Assembly (NCBI GenBank): GCA_040357565.1
Contig: JBDODJ010000063.1
From: Cercozoa sp. M6MM
Taxonomy: Eukaryota > Protista > Endomyxa: Ascetosporea
Strand: one strand, 5' to 3'
Length of the DNA: 63,879 bases
The notes below the pieces were generated by a model that did not search any database, had not been told where the DNA came from, and was given only the letters and a program-made list of their open reading frames with translations. The translations under genes were made by a program, and so were the position numbers. Positions 450-32,577 of the stretch are shown piece by piece. How positions within the stretch are numbered: the first letter of the stretch is position 1; every line of letters starts with the position of its first letter.

Positions 450-871
450 ATCGGGCACGCGAGCCGTCCCTTGAGGTACCTTTCCTGTGTCCCTGCCGCT
501 AAACCTTTTAATGCATCTTTACTGTGTCGTAGTTCGACTATGCGAAACGAAAGTGGCGCACGGACAAAGTTGAAGACGACGCTCTGCTCGCCGCTGAGTC
601 GCAGTACGCCTTCTTCTATGTTGTATAACCTGGATTTTTTTTGTCTGCGCGATGTCCAGTTGGCCCACCACTGTCGGCGTTTCGCTCACTGTGCGCGAGC
701 GATACACAGGTAAGCGGGGGGGGGGGATGGAGGAAATGCGCGGGGTTTAAACAACTATGCGTCGCAGTGGAAGTCATCGTACTCGTTGCCGGACTTGTCG
801 TCTTCGCTGCAGCGCTTGGATCCGCCTGCTGGCTGCGAAGAGAGTTCGATTCGCCAGAAAAGCTGGATTAG
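381..871 (+). CDS. 3' part of a 5'-truncated hypothetical protein with a C-terminal transmembrane helix
   Basis: Exons bounded by GT-AG introns (KDVPTTDFQC...EPSLE|FDYAKRKW...). The last exon VEVIVLVAGLVVFAAALGSACWLRR ends in TAG at 871. Confidence 0.45.
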
Positions 872-999
872 CGTTCAGAATTTGGTGGAGCAGCGAGACT
901 GATTGTTTTAATCTTAATGCATCGTCGTTCCGCTCAAACTCAGATGACAGCCCGCACGTTCAGTGCTGTGTGGCGGTGTGTGACTACCTCAAATACCTT

Positions 1000-2200
1000 G
1001 GTTCTGGTTCTGGATGCGAATACCGTTTCTCACCGGCACAGCAGGCAATCAAAGCCCTGCCGATGACCTGAAACACTCAATCAGGTTTGTTGTTTGTTGT
1101 TGTTTTTTTTTTCTATTTTTGGGCTCTGAATGCACACTTAACATAGAGGGGTTCGTCGTGAGCTGTGCGAGTTTGCGACGGCTGCGCACCCTGTGATGCG
1201 ACACTTTTCGCTTTCACGTGTTGCAAGTATTGTATGCTCAAGTCAATATGCCACAAAACCACATTGATGCCGTTCTAGGATCGTGGTTCAAAAGAACTGC
1301 CGGACAGTCGAGGGTAAAATGGACATTGGACGAAGGCGATCGGTGGCTTGTACGTTGCACGTCTGATTGCATCCAGTGTTTGTATCGCTTCATGTAACTA
1401 CTGGGAGGCAGGCATACATGTGGCCAGTTTCGAAGATGTTCCCTTTGGTCACAGCTGGTACAACTCTGTAATTTACCGAATCACTGCCCTGGATCGAAAA
1501 TGTTAAAATAGTTTAAATTCGCTTTAGCTACGATTGGATACAGTGCCTTTCAAAGCATTCCACTGATTGGCAAGTGTTTGCTTGGCGACTCTACTGCTGT
1601 ATGAAATCTTCCTCCGCACAGAGGCTTGGGGTTTTCTAGTTTGACTTTGCTGGTCAGACGCAACTGAACCGTGGGATTCCGCTCCGTGGACGTGCTTTCG
1701 TGTGTCTGTTGAGTGTGTTCTCTTTGGCTTTCTTCAACTGCCAAATCTGTCATATGCTGATGCTTTTGTTGCAGTTGTGGCGCCTCTGACTTTCAATGCA
1801 ACACATGACCTGCTGGATGAGGTTGTCGATCGTACGTTACTGATGCGTTGCTCCACACTTGGCAGTGTATATCGCCTGTCAATCGCGTCAACTCTGGCCT
1901 CTGTCGGCATTGCCAAGCACACGCAAGTGTAACAAGACTGTATCCAATCAGTTTGACTACAACTGAACCTGTTTGTTTGTTTGTTTGTTGCAGTGAAACA
2001 CATCAAATCGAACGCCGCTTTGCCATGGCACAGCAACGCTGCGGGAGCTACGACGATTCTCCGGCCACGCGGTACCAAAAGAATTACAGCCATGCACGCT
2101 GCATGTTATCTTTGCTTTTTGAAGGACGCAAGTCGCCAGTCTGTACGAAGAGAATAACGAATTTTTTGCGCATACCCGAGTGGGCCACATACTAAGCCAG
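1000..2200 (+). CDS. hypothetical multi-exon protein, limits uncertain
   Basis: Several plus-strand intron-like segments (gtacg...cag, gtttgttt...tag) separate open exon fragments. No recognisable domain. Confidence 0.3.
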
Positions 2201-2524
2201 ACGAGTTCGACCCAATGATAGTCTCCTCACTACTGTACTGTGGAGTACAGTACTTATCCTGAAAGAAACATTTTCCGCAATGGGTCCAGTGCGGCTGGTC
2301 TGCTGATCGATCAATCTGATCCCAAAGGAAGATTCCATCTGACTGTGTAAGGGGGGATTGAGAGCAAAAACACCGACCCATCGCCTTTTTTACGTCCTGT
2401 ATTGTTGTACTCTTGCTTGATTGTACTCTTGCGCCACGGTATAGTGTGTACTGTGCTGTGTGTTGCATTTTTCTTGCTCTCGCTTTTGTCGGACTCACCC
2501 GTTCGTGTTTAGCTCACACACACC

Positions 2525-3629
2525 ATGAACATCCTTCAGTCGCTCGCCTACTCGCCGTACGCCGGTCAGGTCAAGGTGTGTTGCCATTGTCTTGTCAAAT
2601 ATTGTGCTCGTTTCTGTATTGCGTTTTTCCTTTCCAGGTCGGTTTCCGCTCGGCCCATGGCAAGTTCGTCTGCGCTGAGGGCAACGGTGTTGCTGTCGCC
2701 AACCGCGACCAGGCCTCGGGCTGGGAGACGTTCGACGTGATCAAGGTCGGCCCGGGTGTCTTCACGATCCGCACGGCTCACGGCAAGTACGCTTGCGCCG
2801 AGGGCAACGGCAACTTCATCGCCAACCGCGACCAGGCGCAGGGCTGGGAGCAGTTCGCCTTTGAGTTCCGCGGCAACGGCACTGTCGCCAGTACTTTGAG
2901 CCTCTATGTTGCCTCCTTTGTGCTGTGTGCTGCTTTAACCCTGTGTGCATGCAGTCAAGTCGGTTGCCCACAACAAGTACCTGTCGGCGCAGCAGGACGG
3001 CCGTCTGGAGTGCAACCGCGACCAGGCGCAGGGCTGGGAGGAGTTCCAGGTCATTGCTCTGGGTGACGGTGTCGAGCGTATCATTGGCGGCTCGTCCAAC
3101 GCTCAGGTCAAGGTGACGCTCCGCTCGGCTCACGGTACACCTTCTTCTGCTTTCGTCTAGTCTACTTGGGTCGATGTGTACGCGAGTGTTTTTGGTGGGC
3201 AGGCAAGTACTTCTGCGCCGAGGGCAACGGCATGGCTGTGGCCAACCGTGACCACCCGTCGGGTACCCTGAGTTAGTCTAGTGTTATAGTCTAATGTTAC
3301 CCCGCCCCCTCACCTCAACCTGAATGATTTTGTCTGTATGTGCAGACTGGGAGAAGGTCGTGTTCCAGCCCATGGGCAACGGCGTCGTCGCCATTCGCTC
3401 GTGCCACAACAAGTACGCCTGCGCCGAGGGCAACGGCAACTTCGTGATCAACCGCGATCAGGTGCAGGGCTGGGAGCAGTTCCGCATTGAGTTTGTCGGT
3501 CCCAACACGATCGCCATCAAGTCGGTCGCCCACAACAAGTACCTGTCGGCCCAGCAGGACGGCCGCCTCGAGTGCAACCGCGACTCGGTCCAGGACTGGG
3601 AGAAGTTCCAGTACCAGATTGTCGCCTAA
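2525..3629 (+). CDS. fascin/hisactophilin-like protein with two beta-trefoil domains (six ~40-aa repeats)
   Basis: Five exons. Repeats of the form (F/I)RSAHGKYxCAEGNGxxxANRDQxxGWExF and IKSVAHNKYLSAQQDGRLECNRD. Strong C/G-ending codon bias. TAA at 3629. Confidence 0.9.
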
Positions 3630-3803
3630 GACAAAGCTCCAGGCAGGGAGTGACTGACGTGTGTAAATCGATCGTGTAAATCTATCATGTCGTGTACTAG
3701 TCGATTTTTCTGTACCAAAACCTGTTAGTGTGTTAACTACGCTACGCGACGGTGCGTGCGCGTCATTGCTCGGTCTTCAAACGACACAGTAGGCTGTACT
3801 ATA

Positions 3804-4288
3804 TGTTACAGACTGACTCAGATTATGCAGTCTCCGCGGGGATAAACCCAGACAGACCAGTTGGTCCACTATCATTGAAGCAAAAGAGAAAGAAGAGTTA
3901 AGAGTTTGTGTCTCTGCGGTACTACTGCCTATAGAGCTGTGACTGGACCTGTCTGAAAGCCTGTCCCTGTAGATTGAGCCTGCCAGTTGGCAAAGAGAAA
4001 ACCTCATCTACTTGGCATCAGCTGGTCAGTTGCTCTGCAGTTTGTACTGATATCCACCTCTACAAGTAAGCATTGGCTGCTGTAGAGAGAAGGGGTTTTT
4101 AAATCTTCTCACGATTTTCCCTGTGACGGAAGTTTCCGTCTACAACTCCGTCTAGTTTGACGTAAGAACCCAGTTGGGGTAATTCTTCACTTCGCTTCTT
4201 CAAACTAAATCATTTGATTTCCTCGCTTCGTCTAATTGACGACTTACTTCTTTTATTTAGTTCTTTTCACTGACAACCGTCAGTAACA
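3804..4288 (+). mobile_element. element A: TG...CA-bounded non-coding element (solo-LTR-like or Ginger-like), 485 bp
   Basis: Ends TGTTACAGAC / GTCAGTAACA (9 of 10 inverted match), flanked by ATA/ATA. TCCGCGGGGA at 3833. Predicted introns 3919-3972, 4025-4085 and 4179-4260. Confidence 0.85.
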
Positions 4289-4398
4289 ATAAGCCCACAC
4301 TGGAATACACTTCGAGCAGCTAAGACAAAAGAAAAACCCTTGGCACAGGGAAGCTACTAACTACCATAGTACAGTCAAGTAAAACCAGACAGGAGTTG

Positions 4399-4826
4399 TG
4401 TTACTGCACATTTTCAGTAGTCATTGCTCTGACCCGTCCGCGTGGAGGTGATAATCTATGTCTCAAGCAAGTTTGAGATAGGAAAGAGTTTAAGAGTGTT
4501 TTGGCTTGATCTTGCCTGGACAGAGTCCTTGCAGAGAAGCACAAAGCTCCGTCACGGCTTCAGCCTGGTCAGTTAGCTCATTGGCTGGTTTCCATTCCAC
4601 TCACTTTGTCGTGTGTTCACAGGCGGAGTTTTTCTTTCATAAACGCATTGTTACGACCAAGGACGTCTTCCTTCGGTCGAGATCCAGTGGGATCACTTCG
4701 AGACCCAGTAGGGGTATTTCACCTTCAGTTCTAACGTTGACTCAACTGAGTGACGACTTATCTAATTGAATGATTTATTTAGTCTCTCCTTTCCTTTACT
4801 GATTGGGCCATTGAGCCGCAGTAACA
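4399..4826 (+). mobile_element. element B: diverged paralogue of A, 428 bp
   Basis: Perfect 9-bp inverted ends TGTTACTGC / GCAGTAACA, flanked by TTG/TTG. TCCGCGTGGA at 4437. Predicted introns 4568-4622 and 4714-4782. Confidence 0.85.
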
Positions 4827-4861
4827 TTGACAATGTGAACTACTAGAGTCTCCGCGATGTG

Positions 4862-5612
4862 TTACTGCTGACCCAAGTACTCCTGCGTCTGACCCACGAT
4901 GCCAGGGCCGACTGGCTGCTGCTTGCGCGCCTTCTCAAGGTCCATCGCACTGCCACAGGGAGCACATACAAACGTGTCAAACACACACACTCACACCTGA
5001 GAAAAAGAAGCTTACGTCTTGAGTCGCAGCGAATCTTCGTCAGTTGCCTGTGATACACAAGTTGAAATAAAACACAAGGGCGGGGGGGGCCCGCGTAAGC
5101 ACCATCTTTTTCTTTTCATCGAGCTTCTTGAAGTAGGCATCGCTGTCCCAAAGCGCACGTGTTCTCTCGTCAAACTCTGCTCATACACAGCAACGATACT
5201 ACCTTTACCGGAAACATAAAATCAGTGCCCACAAAGGTACCCTGTTCTCTGGCCGGCGCCACTCGCATTACTCTGCCAAGCAGCTCTGCACCTGTAAATA
5301 CGACGTAGTATTGGACACACCAACACATATGCAATGGTCATACCGTTCATGTTGTCAATGGCTGCCTTGGCATCCTCCTCCTCTGCAAAGTCAACGAAGC
5401 CGTAGCCACGGTGCTCAGCTACGAATCCAAGAAAGTCAAAAAAAATCAAACAAAAGTCACAAAAGTCAAAACGAACCTGTGTCGGCATCACGCGGAATGC
5501 TCACGTGTGTGACCTCGCCAAATGTGATGAACGTTGCCTGGAGGATCGGCTCACGCACCGAGGCTTCAAGGCCACCGATGTACACTGTTGTCTTGCTCAG
5601 CTTGTACTCCAT
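4862..5612 (-). CDS. RRM-only homologue of the cyclophilin E (PPIE/Cyp33) N-terminus
   Basis: RNP2 VYIGGL and RNP1 RGYGFVDF, then AKAAIDNMNGAELLGRVMRV, typical of the PPIE RRM. A short tail ends ...QEYLGQQ* with no cyclophilin domain. Confidence 0.85.
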
Positions 5613-29814: not shown

Positions 29815-31276
29815 ATGGAAGAGTTCGTGAAGTTGAGCGACAGCGGTAATATCTCCTACCTTGTGAACAGTGTGCTGCCATCATTCGTTGCTTTTAGAAA
29901 ATGAGAACAGCGAAAAGATGGAAGAAAGACTCCATAACTTACAGCAAAATCTTTCACGGAGACAAGGGTGGATGGATGCGACGGAAGAACTCATTCCTTG
30001 CCCCGGGTTTGTTTGCAAGGTGCGCGTACAGGCGCCGCTCAACTTTCTCAAGTTACTCGCCGCCGGTTTGCCTGCACCTCTCAAAAGTGACCTGCGAAAG
30101 ATCGAAAGGGCCGTTCACGAGAAATACAAAGGCGACGAAGCACTAGAAAGCGACGAAAAAGCGGAGCAAGCAGTCAAACTATTCATCAACATGTGTTTTT
30201 CAAACAAGCTGGGCGATATGGAGGTAGAGCATGGCAAGTTGCGGCTGCCTGCAAGTTTTTCGGCGCCAAGAATGGACGCAGACAAGTCAGGACAGCCATG
30301 CTTGGTGGCAGAAGCGGTTTTCTCTCGCCAAACGATTCGCAGTTGCCAAGAGGACACAGAATTCCGGCGCTTCTGCTGCTCAATGGCACTTTCGAACTAC
30401 GAGACAAAGTACGACATCAAAGGCGACCTCGAGAAGCACAAAATGAAGTTCCCTAAACTCCAACAGAAAGGTCAGGCGGCTCATCATCCTCAACGCATCC
30501 GAAAGTCTGCAGTCGCTAAAGTGAGGCCGAAAGTCGAGTTGATCGAAAGTGCCTCCTCACACGACGGAGATTCCGACAGGAAAGATATGTTGAAGTCAGA
30601 CCTGCCTGCAGAAGGAACCTTTGTCGAGCAGTTCAAAGCCGATTTGCTGCAGCAAACGCAGCAACTTCGTGCCGCGACTGCACAGTCGGAAACCGCACGC
30701 AGCAGCTCAACTGCCAGAGACCTGAAAGTTGTGCAAATTAACACGTCGAATGGCCCTTACGAACCCACTGTGCGCTTCTTCCAGAAACACACGTCTCAGT
30801 GGCAGCAGATTCCACAAGAAGCGATTGCTCATTCCTCAGTATCCGGCAGCTTTCGATTGGAACTAGATTTTTCAAAGGTACCACCGGCATATTCGTGCCT
30901 GTTGACTGAGTAGCGACTGCCTATCTTTCAGGTACCCGAGATACGCACAGTTGGCGACCTGAAAGCCGAGATCTCTCGAAAGAAACTTGTGTTCCGGACG
31001 GGTACACCGCCTTTCCGTGTGCTGGCGAGTTTCACACGCGAGTCGCTGCCTCTGCACGCCATGGACGACTTTGTCGCTCAGTTTGAACCGAATCGGACGC
31101 GACTTTTGTTGCAGTTTCAACTGAGTGTTAAGAAGCTTCGAGCGAACGAAGTTCCTTCCAACCTGAGGCGACAACAAGACACCTCTACGTCCGCAACCGC
31201 GTCGTCATCCACAGCAACTTACAAACCAACGCGGCAGCTCGTCGAAGATTGGATGACTGACGTCATGCTCGACTAA
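29815..31276 (+). CDS. PIH1-domain protein (kintoun/DNAAF2-like)
   Basis: IPCPGFVCK, KLFINMC, LPASFSAPRMDADKSGQPCLV and FPKLQQKG...QRIR, followed by a CS-like C-terminal region. Confidence 0.8.
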
Positions 31277-31422
31277 TGAATCTTAAAGTTCATGGACTGA
31301 AATCACCAAACTGCTCGGCAGTGTCTGGCCGCGTTCGAGGGGTCTCCCTCGTGTACGGTAAAGGCGTACTCGCTCCTGAGACCGATAGATTAGATTAGCC
31401 CCGCCCAATACACGCACGACGA

Positions 31423-31966
31423 TGTTACGAAACGGTATCTTCTATCCGGCCAGTCAGATCTCTGGTGCTCCGCGTGGAAGAAAGCTATTCATTGAGCACT
31501 TTGAGAAGTGTGGTGTATTGTGTTTGTCTGGTACCCTGACCTCTCCGAGAGTGTTGCTAACCTCCTTACCCTGTGTTTGGTAGACTGACCTTGAAAGAGC
31601 AAGATTTTGCTCCTTTCCTGAAAAGGCTCTCTACTCACCAGGTAAAGCACCTCTCCAGGCTCCAGCCCTTGCACTCTCACGGAATCCCTTGTTGCTGTCT
31701 TCCCAGCACAGAGAGCCTTTCTTTTTCTCCTTTACGTCCCTCCTTCTCCTTCCTTCCTTCTTCTGACTACCGGGCCTCTCTTCCTTCCCGACCAGTCTAC
31801 TTCCTGTACTTTGCCGACCCTATCTTGGGGTAACTACCTCTGAACTGACTACGTCTACTGACTCAATTCTTCTTCACATCGATTCCATTTGTTTCTTTAG
31901 TCTTTTTCCTGGCATAGTACTCTTTTGCACTACCAAAGCCTCAATTTCTGAAAGGCTGCGGTAATA
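31423..31966 (+). mobile_element. element C: member of the TGTTAC family, 544 bp
   Basis: TGTTAC...GTAATA (one substitution), TSD ACGA/ACGA. TCCGCGTGGA at 31469. Predicted introns 31531-31583, 31642-31711, 31736-31795 and 31830-31900. Confidence 0.85.
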
Positions 31967-31971
31967 ACGAT

Positions 31972-32559
31972 TGTTACCGCAGCCCTCTCAGATAGGGATC
32001 AGGCCTTGGTAAATTAAGGGTACTTTGCCAGTGATACAAAAAAAACTAAGGAACGTAATAAAGTCTGTTCTTGGAGGAAGAGTGGCCAAGTGTCAGTTTG
32101 AAAGAATGAGTTACCCCAACGGTTCAGTTGGGCGGCAAAGCACTTGTGGTGGACGGGACAGTCACCCGTCAGATGGGAACTGTAGAAAGGACAGTCAGTA
32201 TAAAGGGTCCTTGAGACGGAAAGGCGTCGTGAGAACTGAGTAGTGAGGATTCAGAAGTACTTGAGTTGGAAGTAAAGAAAAGAAGGGCCCCTGGAAAGGC
32301 AGAGGACAGGTAGAAGCGAAGACAACTGGTCCTGGAGAGATCAGATTACCTGGTCGAGAGAGAGCCCTTCTTTGAGTTCAGCTGCAAAAAGCTTGCTCAA
32401 GGCTTCCCTACTCAAACACAGGTGTTCCACAGTCTGGACTGAAGCTCTCAGTAGGTCAGGATACCAGCAAACACACGTCAAAATCTTCCACACCTCTTTT
32501 GAGGATTTTTTAAGTTGTTGGGTTGCTTCCGCGCGGATACAGTAGTTCATGCTGTAACA
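31972..32559 (-). mobile_element. element D: member of the TGTTAC family, 588 bp, tail-to-tail with C
   Basis: Plus-strand ends TGTTACCGC / GCTGTAACA, TSD CGAT/CGAT. TCCGCGCGGA at 32528-32537. Predicted minus-strand introns 32464-32408, 32349-32291, 32260-32180 and 32114-32046. Confidence 0.9.
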
Positions 32560-32577
32560 CGATGATCAATATTAAGA

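What the first reader, a model, noticed from the sequence alone, without database searches (positions are those of the whole stretch)
3804..4826. Mobile elements that appear to encode a multiply spliced, structured RNA, with helices completed only across exon junctions
Seen: many of the short blocks conserved among the diverged elements A, B, C and D are GT-AG splice sites delimiting host-sized (53-82 nt) introns at equivalent positions. Intron 1 is A 3919-3972, C 31531-31583, D 32464-32408 (decayed in B). Intron 2 is A 4025-4085, B 4568-4622, C 31642-31711, D 32349-32291. A probable third is C 31736-31795, D 32260-32180. The last (GGG|GTA...TTAG|T) is A 4179-4260, B 4714-4782, C 31830-31900, D 32114-32046. 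The same donors (GTCAGT, GTAAAG, GTAATC) occur in neighbouring host genes. Removing the last intron creates a hairpin with a different sequence in each copy: A AAGAACCC-agtt-GGG|TTCTT (8 bp), B GAGACCC-agta-GGG|TCTC (7 bp), C GACCC-tatctt-GGG|TC (5 bp), D GCCCAAC-tgaacc-GTTGGG|T. Inference: the spliced RNA is under structural selection, either as a ncRNA carried by a transposon or as a highly spliced leader inside an LTR. Established: reverse transcription of spliced RNA purges sense introns, so the family must move as DNA, use unspliced RNA, or be copied from the opposite strand. I do not recognise a described element with this design.
Basis: partly seen in the sequence, partly recalled or inferred. 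Interest (0 to 1): 0.9.

Follow-up and report, generated by a model that had tools for sequence, protein, structure and literature searches.

The report
Retrotransposon LTRs that carry real introns
The four elements are long terminal repeats (LTRs) of Ty3/gypsy retrotransposons, each holding three or four short introns; other genomic copies have lost exactly these introns, which shows they are spliced, and this is unusual because reverse transcription normally purges introns.

Summary

- **What A-D are.** They are LTRs of four related Ty3/gypsy families, here as solo or nested copies. They have TGTTAC...GTAACA ends and 4-bp target duplications, and dozens of copies each. B, C and D also flank gag-pol elements elsewhere in the genome.
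- **The introns are real.** No RNA run was listed, so I used a genomic test. Other copies of the same families lack exactly the predicted segments, GT to AG to the base, and have their own target duplications.
  - Shown at sequence level: intron 1 (B, C, D), intron 2 (C, D) and the last intron (A, C, plus an alternative acceptor in C).
  - Shown from BLAST coordinates only: intron 2 of B and intron 3 of D.
- **Position.** The introns are in sense orientation, upstream of the primer-binding site. That strand is strongly depleted of ATG, so they most likely lie in the 5' leader (inferred).
- **Replication.** Unspliced RNA must be the usual template. Spliced RNA is sometimes copied and founds intron-poor lineages.
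  - The acceptor of C intron 2 is 31706, not 31711.
  - B's intron 1 was excised, not decayed.
  - The junction hairpin forms in natural spliced copies, but a swap control shows no family-specific covariation.
- **Rejected.** The ncRNA reading is not supported.

Another first-stage note (s1-808384) reports the same phenomenon elsewhere in this genome. Four literature searches found no described multi-intron LTR.

The parts
3804..4288 (+). Element A: solo LTR (485 bp) of a family with at least 40 genomic matches. Flanks are imperfect (TATA / ATAA).
   Evidence: Other family members have clean 4-bp target duplications.
3833..3842 (+). TCCGCGGGGA motif in A, about 75 nt upstream of the first donor. 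It is conserved in all four LTRs and is a candidate promoter element (inferred).
   Evidence: The equivalents are B 4437-4446, C 31469-31478 and D 32528-32537.
3919..3972 (+). A intron 1 (54 nt, GTACTA...CTGTAG).
   Evidence: Homologous to the introns shown to be excised in B, C and D. No excised A copy was seen.
4025..4085 (+). A intron 2 (61 nt, GTCAGT...CTGTAG).
   Evidence: Supported by homology only. Copies with internal deletions here exist.
4179..4260 (+). A last intron (82 nt, GTAATT...ATTTAG).
   Evidence: It is precisely absent from the natural copy L024 (C129), whose junction reads GGG|TTC, with a 5-nt insertion in the loop upstream of the junction.
4164..4178 (+). A: 5' arm, loop and GGG of the junction hairpin. 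The 3' arm continues at 4261-4265 after splicing.
   Evidence: It forms in the natural spliced copy L024 (MFE -13.3, z -3.2). It is not family-specific.
4399..4826 (+). Element B: LTR (428 bp) of a family whose full-length members lie on C838 and C88. This copy has already lost intron 1.
4508..4509 (+). B: exon 1 / exon 2 junction left by excision of intron 1, which is 52 nt in the B copies in L035 and L008.
4568..4622 (+). B intron 2 (55 nt, GTCAGT...TCACAG).
   Evidence: A 55-bp gap at this position is seen in at least 7 copies (C53, C19, C31, C78, C2, C17, C996), from BLAST coordinates only.
4714..4782 (+). B last intron (69 nt, GTATTT...ATTTAG).
   Evidence: Supported by homology only. It contains one of B's two sense-strand ATGs.
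31423..31966 (+). Element C: solo LTR (544 bp), 99% identical to the 5' LTR of a full-length Ty3/gypsy element on C414. Its target duplication is ACGA (31419-31422 and 31967-31970).
31531..31583 (+). C intron 1 (53 nt, GTACCC...TGGTAG, with an internal TGCTAAC).
   Evidence: It is precisely absent from L066 and L067. The same junction is shared by at least 10 further copies.
31642..31706 (+). C intron 2 (65 nt, GTAAAG...TCCCAG).
31736..31795 (+). C intron 3, predicted (60 nt, GTCCCT...GACCAG).
   Evidence: Supported by its position, homologous to D intron 3. No excised copy was found.
31830..31900 (+). C last intron (71 nt, GTAACT...CTTTAG). An alternative acceptor lies at 31916-31917, giving an 88-nt intron.
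   Evidence: The 71-nt excision is seen in L060 (C8) and L061 (C342). The 88-nt excision is seen in the 3' LTR of the C107 element, L059.
31972..32559 (-). Element D: solo LTR (588 bp) of a family whose internal region on C989 encodes an integrase but has no reverse-transcriptase match. Its target duplication is CGAT (31968-31971 and 32560-32563), one base offset from C's.
32408..32464 (-). D intron 1 (57 nt, GTATCC...GAGTAG).
   Evidence: It is precisely absent from the D-like copy L067:770-1196. At least 6 further copies align without a break across this junction.
32291..32349 (-). D intron 2 (59 nt, GTAATC...TTCCAG).
32180..32260 (-). D intron 3 (81 nt, GTACTT...CTACAG).
   Evidence: An 81-bp gap is seen in C436 and C1380, from BLAST coordinates only.
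32046..32114 (-). D last intron (69 nt, GTAACT...CCTTAG).
   Evidence: Supported by homology only.

Best explanation
**What they are.** A, B, C and D are LTRs of four related Ty3/gypsy (Metaviridae-type) retrotransposon families. In this window they occur as solo or nested copies.

**What is unusual.** Each LTR carries three (A, B) or four (C, D) short GT-AG spliceosomal introns.
- They lie on the same strand as gag-pol.
- They lie between a conserved TCCGCGNGGA motif near the left end and the primer-binding site just beyond the right end.
- They make up 37-46% of the LTR.

**How it most likely works.**
- Shown: the host spliceosome removes these introns from element RNA.
- Inferred: they lie in the R-U5 part, that is, the 5' untranslated leader of the gag-pol messenger.
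- Follows from established knowledge of reverse transcription: both LTRs of a new copy are rebuilt from the RNA ends, so a copy keeps an intron only if its template RNA was unspliced at that intron. The four families have kept the same intron positions while their sequences diverged to saturation, so unspliced RNA must be the normal replication template.
- Shown: partly spliced RNA is now and then reverse-transcribed and integrated. This founds intron-poor lineages that go on to multiply.
- Inferred, untested: the introns persist because splicing helps expression of the translated RNA pool in this intron-rich host, or protects it from surveillance of intron-less transcripts, while a separate unspliced pool is copied.
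For: **LTR identity**
- The termini are TG...CA, as TGTTAC...GTAACA.
- Family members have perfect 4-bp target duplications: for family A, and 16 of 17 checked family-C solo LTRs, including every intron-less one.
- Each family gives about 54-66 matches in the 23.6-Mb genome.
- C flanks open reading frames of 1838-1964 aa on C414 and C107. B flanks one on C838. D flanks one on C989.
- Pfam gives the order RT, RNase H, integrase.
- A TGG-led primer-binding-like site lies 2 nt after the LTR, and a purine tract abuts the 3' LTR.

**Splicing**
- Base-exact GT...AG excisions are seen in natural copies.
  - C: introns 1 and 2, and the last intron with two different acceptors.
  - A: the last intron.
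  - B: intron 1. D: introns 1 and 2.
- Gaps of matching size and position are seen for B intron 2 and D intron 3.
- The intron-less C LTR aligns without a break to at least 10 other copies at 89-98% identity. The D-like one aligns to at least 6 copies at 79-83%.
- Intron-less copies are 98-99% identical to intron-bearing ones of the same family, while the introns are shared by families only about 57-61% identical. Loss is therefore the derived state.

**Leader position**
- The sense strand has 0-2 ATG against about 6-8 expected (P 0.0005-0.02). The opposite strand has 3-8.
- In the one element read through (the C-family copy on C414), the first ATG after the LTR opens gag, about 92 nt downstream.

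**Host context**
- Introns in the neighbouring gene are 52-66 nt long, and one has a GTACCT donor.
Against: - No RNA evidence could be obtained. No RNA run was listed for this genome, so no junction read, transcription start or poly(A) site is known.
- The U3/R/U5 borders are therefore inferred.
- B has one ATG at LTR position 60, downstream of the motif.
- C intron 3, the last introns of B and D, and A introns 1 and 2 rest on homology only.
- The family-C tree is unresolved, with no branch supported at 95% or more. The number of independent losses within one family is unknown.
- Intron 2 has a 4-nt CCAG microhomology at its ends, so for that intron alone a DNA-level deletion is conceivable.
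- No element with both LTRs fully assembled was available, because contigs break inside the LTRs. The expected identity of intron state in both LTRs of one copy could not be checked.
- Intron-poor lineages have multiplied, so the introns are not strictly required.
Confidence: 0.8

Rival explanations
1. The introns are real but lie in U3. They would then be spliced in the 3' untranslated region of the element's RNA, downstream of the gag-pol stop, and not in the 5' leader. Splicing there would mark the RNA for nonsense-mediated decay or otherwise regulate it.
For: - The gag-pol frame ends within about 20 nt of, or inside, the start of the 3' LTR, so the whole LTR follows the stop codon.
- In most LTR elements U3 is the longest LTR part (general knowledge).
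- No transcription start has been mapped.
Against: - Strong, strand-specific ATG depletion across the LTR and on to the gag ATG fits a scanned 5' leader, not a 3' UTR.
- The conserved TCCGCGNGGA motif sits upstream of all the introns, where a promoter element would be.
Confidence: 0.1
2. The spliced LTR transcript is itself a functional structured RNA. Its helices are completed only at exon junctions and are kept by selection.
For: - Junction hairpins form in natural spliced copies of C (z -2.9) and A (z -3.2). The unspliced versions of A, B and C score near zero.
- One natural A copy has an altered loop but an intact, even longer, stem.
- The A and B arms differ at three paired positions.
Against: - In a swap control, cognate partners continue the helix by 5, 4, 2 and 1 pairs. 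Non-cognate partners average 2.2 and reach 5, because a purine-rich arm faces a pyrimidine-rich exon start in every family.
- D's helix needs no junction.
- Rfam has no match.
- The elements encode gag-pol, so no separate RNA payload is needed.
- Only four families were compared.
Confidence: 0.07
3. The GT...AG segments are not introns. The short forms would be either ancestral, with later insertions, or the result of DNA-level deletions that happen to coincide with GT and AG.
For: - No RNA data exist.
- Some other deletions in family A do not follow GT-AG: C827, C1181 and small deletions inside the introns.
- Intron 2 has flanking microhomology.
Against: - At least seven different excisions in four families end exactly at GT and AG, and two of them share a donor but use different acceptors.
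- The long forms are shared by all four diverged families at homologous positions, while the short forms are nested within single families.
- Sizes and donors match host introns.
Confidence: 0.03

Closest known systems
Ty3/gypsy (Metaviridae) LTR retrotransposons
   Same: - TG...CA LTR ends and a short target duplication.
- A single gag-pol frame with the order RT, RNase H, integrase (H2C2 zinc finger plus rve core).
- A TGG-led primer-binding-like site and a polypurine tract.
- Abundant solo LTRs.
   Different: - The LTR itself holds three or four complete spliceosomal introns (37-46% of its length), while the coding region has none.
- The closest polyproteins in 5.8 billion sequences are only 27-38% identical.
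LTR elements with a functional internal intron: Ogre, EVADE, BARE and copia, plus Cer1 of C. elegans
   Same: Host splicing acts on a sense-strand intron of an LTR retrotransposon, and spliced and unspliced RNAs have different fates (PMC12786077, PMC3735527).
   Different: - In those elements a single intron lies in the internal coding region, and splicing makes a subgenomic gag or other messenger.
- Here several introns lie wholly inside the LTR, upstream of the primer-binding site, and remove no coding sequence.
- The review PMC12786077 states that plant LTR elements generally lack introns apart from such exceptions.
Retroviral leader splicing, with the major donor in R or the leader (for example HTLV-1 and foamy viruses; from my own knowledge, not tested)
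   Same: A splice donor can sit inside the LTR-derived leader, and unspliced RNA is the genome.
   Different: - In retroviruses the intron runs from the leader deep into the genome, and removes gag-pol and usually the packaging signal.
- Here donor and acceptor are both inside the LTR, so spliced RNA keeps the primer-binding site and all coding sequence and can still be copied, as the processed copies show.
Penelope-like elements that retain introns (Arkhipova et al. 2003, as cited in the papers)
   Same: Both are retroelements in which sense introns persist through retrotransposition.
   Different: Penelope-like elements form a different class, with a telomerase-like RT, a GIY-YIG nuclease and target-primed copying. 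They have no LTRs of this kind.
Boeke's intron-marked Ty assay (1985, as described in PMC12786077)
   Same: Precise loss of a sense intron in new copies is the classic proof of an RNA intermediate. The intron-less LTR lineages here are a natural version of that result.
   Different: In that assay the intron was artificial and was lost on transposition. Here natural introns are mostly retained over long evolutionary times.

Membership tests
LTR retrotransposon, Ty3/gypsy | Direct terminal repeats that begin TG and end CA, with short inverted termini | tested here: met
   All four families have TGTTAC...GTAACA ends.
LTR retrotransposon, Ty3/gypsy | Target-site duplication of 4-6 bp at independent insertions | tested here: met
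   Family members have perfect 4-bp duplications. In family C this holds for 16 of 17 checked solo LTRs, including every intron-less one. For C and D in the window.
LTR retrotransposon, Ty3/gypsy | LTRs flank an internal region that encodes RT, then RNase H, then integrase | tested here: met
   for C (C107, C414) and B (C838). D's internal region (C989) has an integrase match but no RT match. For A only a fragment next to an RT match was seen. Contigs break inside the LTRs, so no element was seen with both LTRs complete.
LTR retrotransposon, Ty3/gypsy | A tRNA primer-binding site next to the 5' LTR and a polypurine tract next to the 3' LTR | tested here: inconclusive
   A TGG-led stretch lies 1-2 nt after the LTR and a purine tract lies just before the 3' LTR. 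The three tRNA genes available (Phe, Arg, Gln) do not match it.
Spliceosomal GT-AG intron | GT and AG borders, with sizes typical of the host | tested here: met
   The introns are 52-82 nt and all are GT...AG. Introns in the neighbouring host gene are 52-66 nt.
Spliceosomal GT-AG intron | Precise removal from RNA | tested here: met
   Met indirectly. Base-exact excisions are seen in integrated copies that have their own target duplications. This covers 7 of the 14 intron copies in A-D at sequence level and 2 more by coordinates.
Spliceosomal GT-AG intron | Junction reads in RNA | not testable with these tools
   No RNA run was listed, so read laying could not be used.
Known structured RNA family (Rfam) | A match at the gathering score to a curated covariance model | tested here: not met
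   The whole window gave 0 matches.
Introner-type intron-generating transposon | The mobile unit is itself the intron and inserts into genes, bringing or creating the splice sites | tested here: not met
   The mobile unit is a 430-590-bp LTR, or a full element of at least about 5-6.4 kb, with 4-bp duplications. The introns are internal parts at fixed positions.
Retrovirus-type leader intron | The donor is in the leader and the acceptor lies far inside the genome, so splicing removes gag-pol | tested here: not met
   Both splice sites of every intron lie inside the LTR, upstream of the primer-binding site.

The most novel reading that the evidence does not exclude
A clade of Ty3/gypsy elements keeps a multi-intron 5' leader inside its LTR as an adaptation. 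Splicing of the leader would license expression of the translated RNA pool in an intron-rich host, through export or translation or through escape from surveillance that targets intron-less transcripts, as HUSH does in mammals (PMC8770142). A separate unspliced pool would be packaged and copied, which is what preserves the introns. This would be a retroelement that passes as a host gene by carrying introns it must avoid splicing in its own genome RNA.
Probability: 0.35. Interest if true: 0.8.

Novelty: new variant of a known kind. Interest (0 to 1): 0.68.

Why it matters
Sense-strand introns are expected to vanish from elements that replicate through RNA. That expectation is the basis of the classic retrotransposition assay. 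Here four diverged LTR-retrotransposon families have kept three or four introns at the same places inside their LTRs, and the genome also holds the products of occasional intron loss.

This gives a natural system, with built-in intron-bearing and intron-less variants, for three questions:
- How does a retroelement divide its RNA between a spliced pool and an unspliced, copied pool?
- Do introns help a mobile element to be expressed, or to escape defences aimed at intron-less transcripts?
- How fast does reverse transcription purge introns?

There is also a practical point. LTR annotation and gene prediction in this genome will meet hundreds of solo LTRs that carry working splice sites.

Tried and rejected
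- **Joined sequences.** I used natural intron-less genomic copies by reference instead. For the helix test the two exon ends were kept as separate strands.
- **Further loci.** The excised B (intron 2) and D (intron 3) copies could therefore only be judged from BLAST coordinates.
- **Host-intron sampling.** Two attempts with an open-frame heuristic were too noisy to use. I replaced them by reading one neighbouring gene.
- **Tree of family C.** It was meant to count independent losses but is unresolved.
- **Host identification.**
  - Three exact protein look-ups were not in the collection.
  - The PIH1-domain open reading frame found no relative at E <= 1e-5.
  - The polyprotein's best relatives are only 27-38% identical.
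  - A search for the palindrome motif in papers gave only unrelated hits.
- **Other negatives.** Rfam gave no match and the window has no tRNA gene.
- **Primer tRNA.** It was not identified.
- **Readings rejected.** A ncRNA payload, chance GT-AG pairs, introner-like gain, and family-specific covariation of the junction helix.

Full report
**1. What is at the coordinates**

The four elements have sharp ends: A 3804-4288, B 4399-4826, C 31423-31966 and D 31972-32559 (minus strand). Each begins TGTTAC and ends GTAACA, except C, which ends GTAATA. A four-way alignment is only 57% identical per column.

**2. They are LTRs of Ty3/gypsy retrotransposons**

- *Copy number.* Each element is a repeat family in the 23.6-Mb genome, with 54-66 reported matches per family. 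These are lower bounds.
- *Target duplications.* Family members have perfect 4-bp duplications of varied sequence.
- *Full-length elements.* A search for integrase and reverse-transcriptase domains found long open frames on several contigs. The window's LTRs flank them:
  - C is the 5' LTR on C414 and the 3' LTR on C107.
  - D is at both ends of C989.
  - B is at both ends of C838 and at the 3' end of an element on C88.
- *Coding region.* The internal regions are a single open frame of 1469-1948 aa that runs to within about 20 nt of, or into, the 3' LTR. Pfam gives the order RT, RNase H, integrase zinc finger, integrase core. That is the Ty3/gypsy order. D's internal region has no RT match.
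- *Priming signals.* A TGG-led stretch lies 1-2 nt after the 5' LTR, and a purine tract abuts the 3' LTR.
- *Relatives.* The nearest polyproteins in a 5.8-billion-sequence search are only 27-38% identical.
- *Contrast.* A different LTR family on C549 has a 262-bp LTR and none of these features.

**3. The introns are real: the genome holds the spliced products**

No RNA run was listed for this genome, so I looked for DNA copies made from spliced RNA. They exist in every family, and the breakpoints are exact.

*Family C*
- L066 and L067 lack 31531-31583 (53 nt) and 31642-31706 (65 nt).
- L060 and L061 lack 31830-31900 (71 nt).
- The 3' LTR of the C107 element lacks 31830-31917 (88 nt). It has the same donor and an AG 17 nt further on.

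*Family A*
- L024 lacks 4179-4260.

*Family B*
- The copies in L035 and L008 carry a 52-nt GTACCT...CTGTAG segment that window B lacks between 4508 and 4509.

*Family D*
- A D-like copy in L067 lacks 32464-32408 and 32349-32291.

Each removed segment starts with GT and ends with AG.
- an 81-bp gap at D intron 3 in C436 and C1380;
- a 55-bp gap at B intron 2 in at least seven copies.

*These are real insertions, and the loss is derived.*
- The intron-less solo LTRs have their own perfect target duplications.
- Used as a query by reference, the natural intron-less C LTR aligns without a break to at least ten more copies at 89-98% identity. Intron-bearing copies align to it in three pieces.
- The D-like intron-less LTR does the same with at least six copies at 79-83%.
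- Intron-less copies are 98-99% identical to intron-bearing copies of their own family, while the introns are shared across families. Loss is therefore derived, and some loss lineages are old and kept multiplying.
- A tree of family C could not resolve how many separate losses occurred within that family. The two acceptors of the last intron and the parallel losses in four families show several events.

**4. Features of the introns**

- They are 52-82 nt long and make up 37-46% of each LTR.
- Positions are homologous: intron 1, intron 2 and the last intron in all four families, and a further intron 3 in C and D.
- Between sister families (A with B, C with D), exons and introns are equally diverged at about 57-61% identity. 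What is kept is the position, the size and the splice signals.
- In larger family alignments, GT and AG are intact in 144 of 150 (A) and 171 of 180 (C) cases. Expectation from mean identity is 88% and 92%.
- The RRM-domain gene next to B on the minus strand, read by frame continuity, has introns of 52, 64, about 55 and 66 nt. Their donors are GTATGA, GTACCT, GTGCTT and GTAAGC. The LTR introns therefore look like host introns.

**5. Where in the LTR they lie (inferred)**

- The introns are on the gag-pol strand.
- The sense strand of the LTRs has 0-2 ATG where about 6-8 are expected (P 0.0005-0.02). The opposite strand has 3-8.
- Most of the ATGs that remain fall outside the presumed leader exons. 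A's and D's lie upstream of the TCCGCGNGGA motif. One of B's two lies inside the last intron, and the other, at LTR position 60, lies downstream of the motif.
- On the C414 element no ATG occurs from the start of the LTR to the gag start, 92 nt beyond it.

This fits a long scanned 5' leader. Most of the LTR would then be R-U5, and the motif would be part of a short U3 promoter. Start and poly(A) sites are unknown, so a U3 (3' UTR) position stays a rival.

**6. How it most likely works**

- *From established knowledge.* Both LTRs of a new copy are rebuilt from the ends of the template RNA, so an intron survives only if that RNA was unspliced there.
- *Shown.* Splicing happens, spliced or partly spliced RNA can be copied and integrated, and yet four families kept the introns.
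- *Inferred.* The usual template is unspliced. The introns are kept because they benefit the element or because spliced RNA is a poor template.

My preferred reading is two RNA pools. A spliced pool would be favoured for export and translation, or shielded from defences against intron-less transcripts (compare PMC8770142). An unspliced pool would be copied. Distinct RNA pools are known for BARE (PMC3735527). Loss lineages have multiplied, so the benefit is not absolute.

**7. The structural claim**

- The junction hairpins form in natural spliced copies: C in L060 and L061 (z -2.9) and A in L024 (z -3.2). The unspliced contexts of A, B and C score near zero.
- L024 has a 5-nt loop insertion that lengthens the stem.
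- In a swap test, cognate arms continue the CCC/GGG core by 5, 4, 2 and 1 pairs. Non-cognate combinations average 2.2 and reach 5, because every family pairs a purine-rich arm with a pyrimidine-rich exon start.
- D's helix is complete before the junction.

The helix is real as pairing potential, but selection on it is not shown. Rfam has no match in the window.

**8. What is known**

- Phrase searches for introns in LTRs or in retrotransposons returned nothing like this design.
- A 2025 review states that plant LTR elements generally lack introns, with Ogre and EVADE as exceptions. In those the intron is internal and makes a subgenomic RNA.
- Dfam and Repbase could not be searched.
- Another first-stage note in this scan (s1-808384) reports an LTR-like element with two introns and a spliced copy elsewhere in this genome. 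That agrees with these results but is not independent proof.

**9. Verdict**

Of the interpretations, the 'spliced leader inside an LTR' branch is supported and the ncRNA/structure branch is not. This is a new variant of a known kind: a Ty3/gypsy clade with a multi-intron LTR. It comes with a natural record of intron purging.

Noticed in passing
window 31419-31422, 31967-31971, 32560-32563: C and D sit tail to tail with overlapping target duplications (ACGA for C, CGAT for D). Two different families therefore inserted one base apart in opposite orientation.
   Followed up: partly
C342:839-1930 (L061), C29:68545-69517 (L008), C28:106039-106994 (L062), C9:141930-142924 (L067), C6 and C111: LTRs of different families repeatedly lie within 0-150 bp of each other. 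One case is another C plus inverted D pair, and another is an A-B pair 2 bp apart. This suggests a shared insertion preference or hot spots.
   Followed up: partly
L036 (C989) 592-5001: The full-length element of family D has a 1469-aa open frame with integrase domains but no reverse-transcriptase match, so it is probably non-autonomous. This agrees with note s1-796007.
   Followed up: partly
window 3833-3842, 4437-4446, 31469-31478, 32528-32537: A TCCGCGNGGA motif (a perfect palindrome in D) lies 45-80 nt upstream of the first donor in every LTR. Note s1-808380 says the palindrome is very frequent genome-wide.
   Followed up: no
L031 50-5896, L033 122-5812, L036 592-5001: The gag-pol frame runs to within about 20 nt of, or into, the 3' LTR. 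The polypurine tract lies between the stop codon and the 3' LTR on the C107 element, so there is almost no internal 3' UTR outside the LTR.
   Followed up: no
L037 (C549) 818-1079 and 5024-5285: A different LTR family has 262-bp, 100% identical LTRs (TGTAAG...TTGCA) and a primer-binding-like site similar to B's. It has no TCCGCG motif, so the intron-bearing design is specific to one clade.
   Followed up: partly
window 4827-5400, minus strand: An RRM-domain gene ends about 35 nt from B. It has at least four introns of 52-66 nt with varied donors (GTATGA, GTACCT, GTGCTT, GTAAGC).
   Followed up: partly
L013 (C1514) 140-561: Three tRNA genes (Phe-GAA, Arg-ACG, Gln-TTG) are spaced about 100 bp apart, next to an A-family LTR.
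   Followed up: no
window 29870-30910: A PIH1-domain open frame found no relative at E <= 1e-5 in the word-seeded search of 5.8 billion proteins, and three exact look-ups failed. The host lineage appears poorly sampled.
   Followed up: partly
window 4289-4398: The 110 bp between A and B belong to neither LTR. Neither A (TATA/ATAA) nor B (GTTG/TTGA) has a clean 4-bp duplication, so this pair may be rearranged.
   Followed up: no
C827:2481-2896 and C1181:3439-3833: Two A-family copies have deletions of 74 and 92 bp that do not match intron borders. The first removes the end of intron 1 plus exon 2 and would fuse two introns into one.
   Followed up: no
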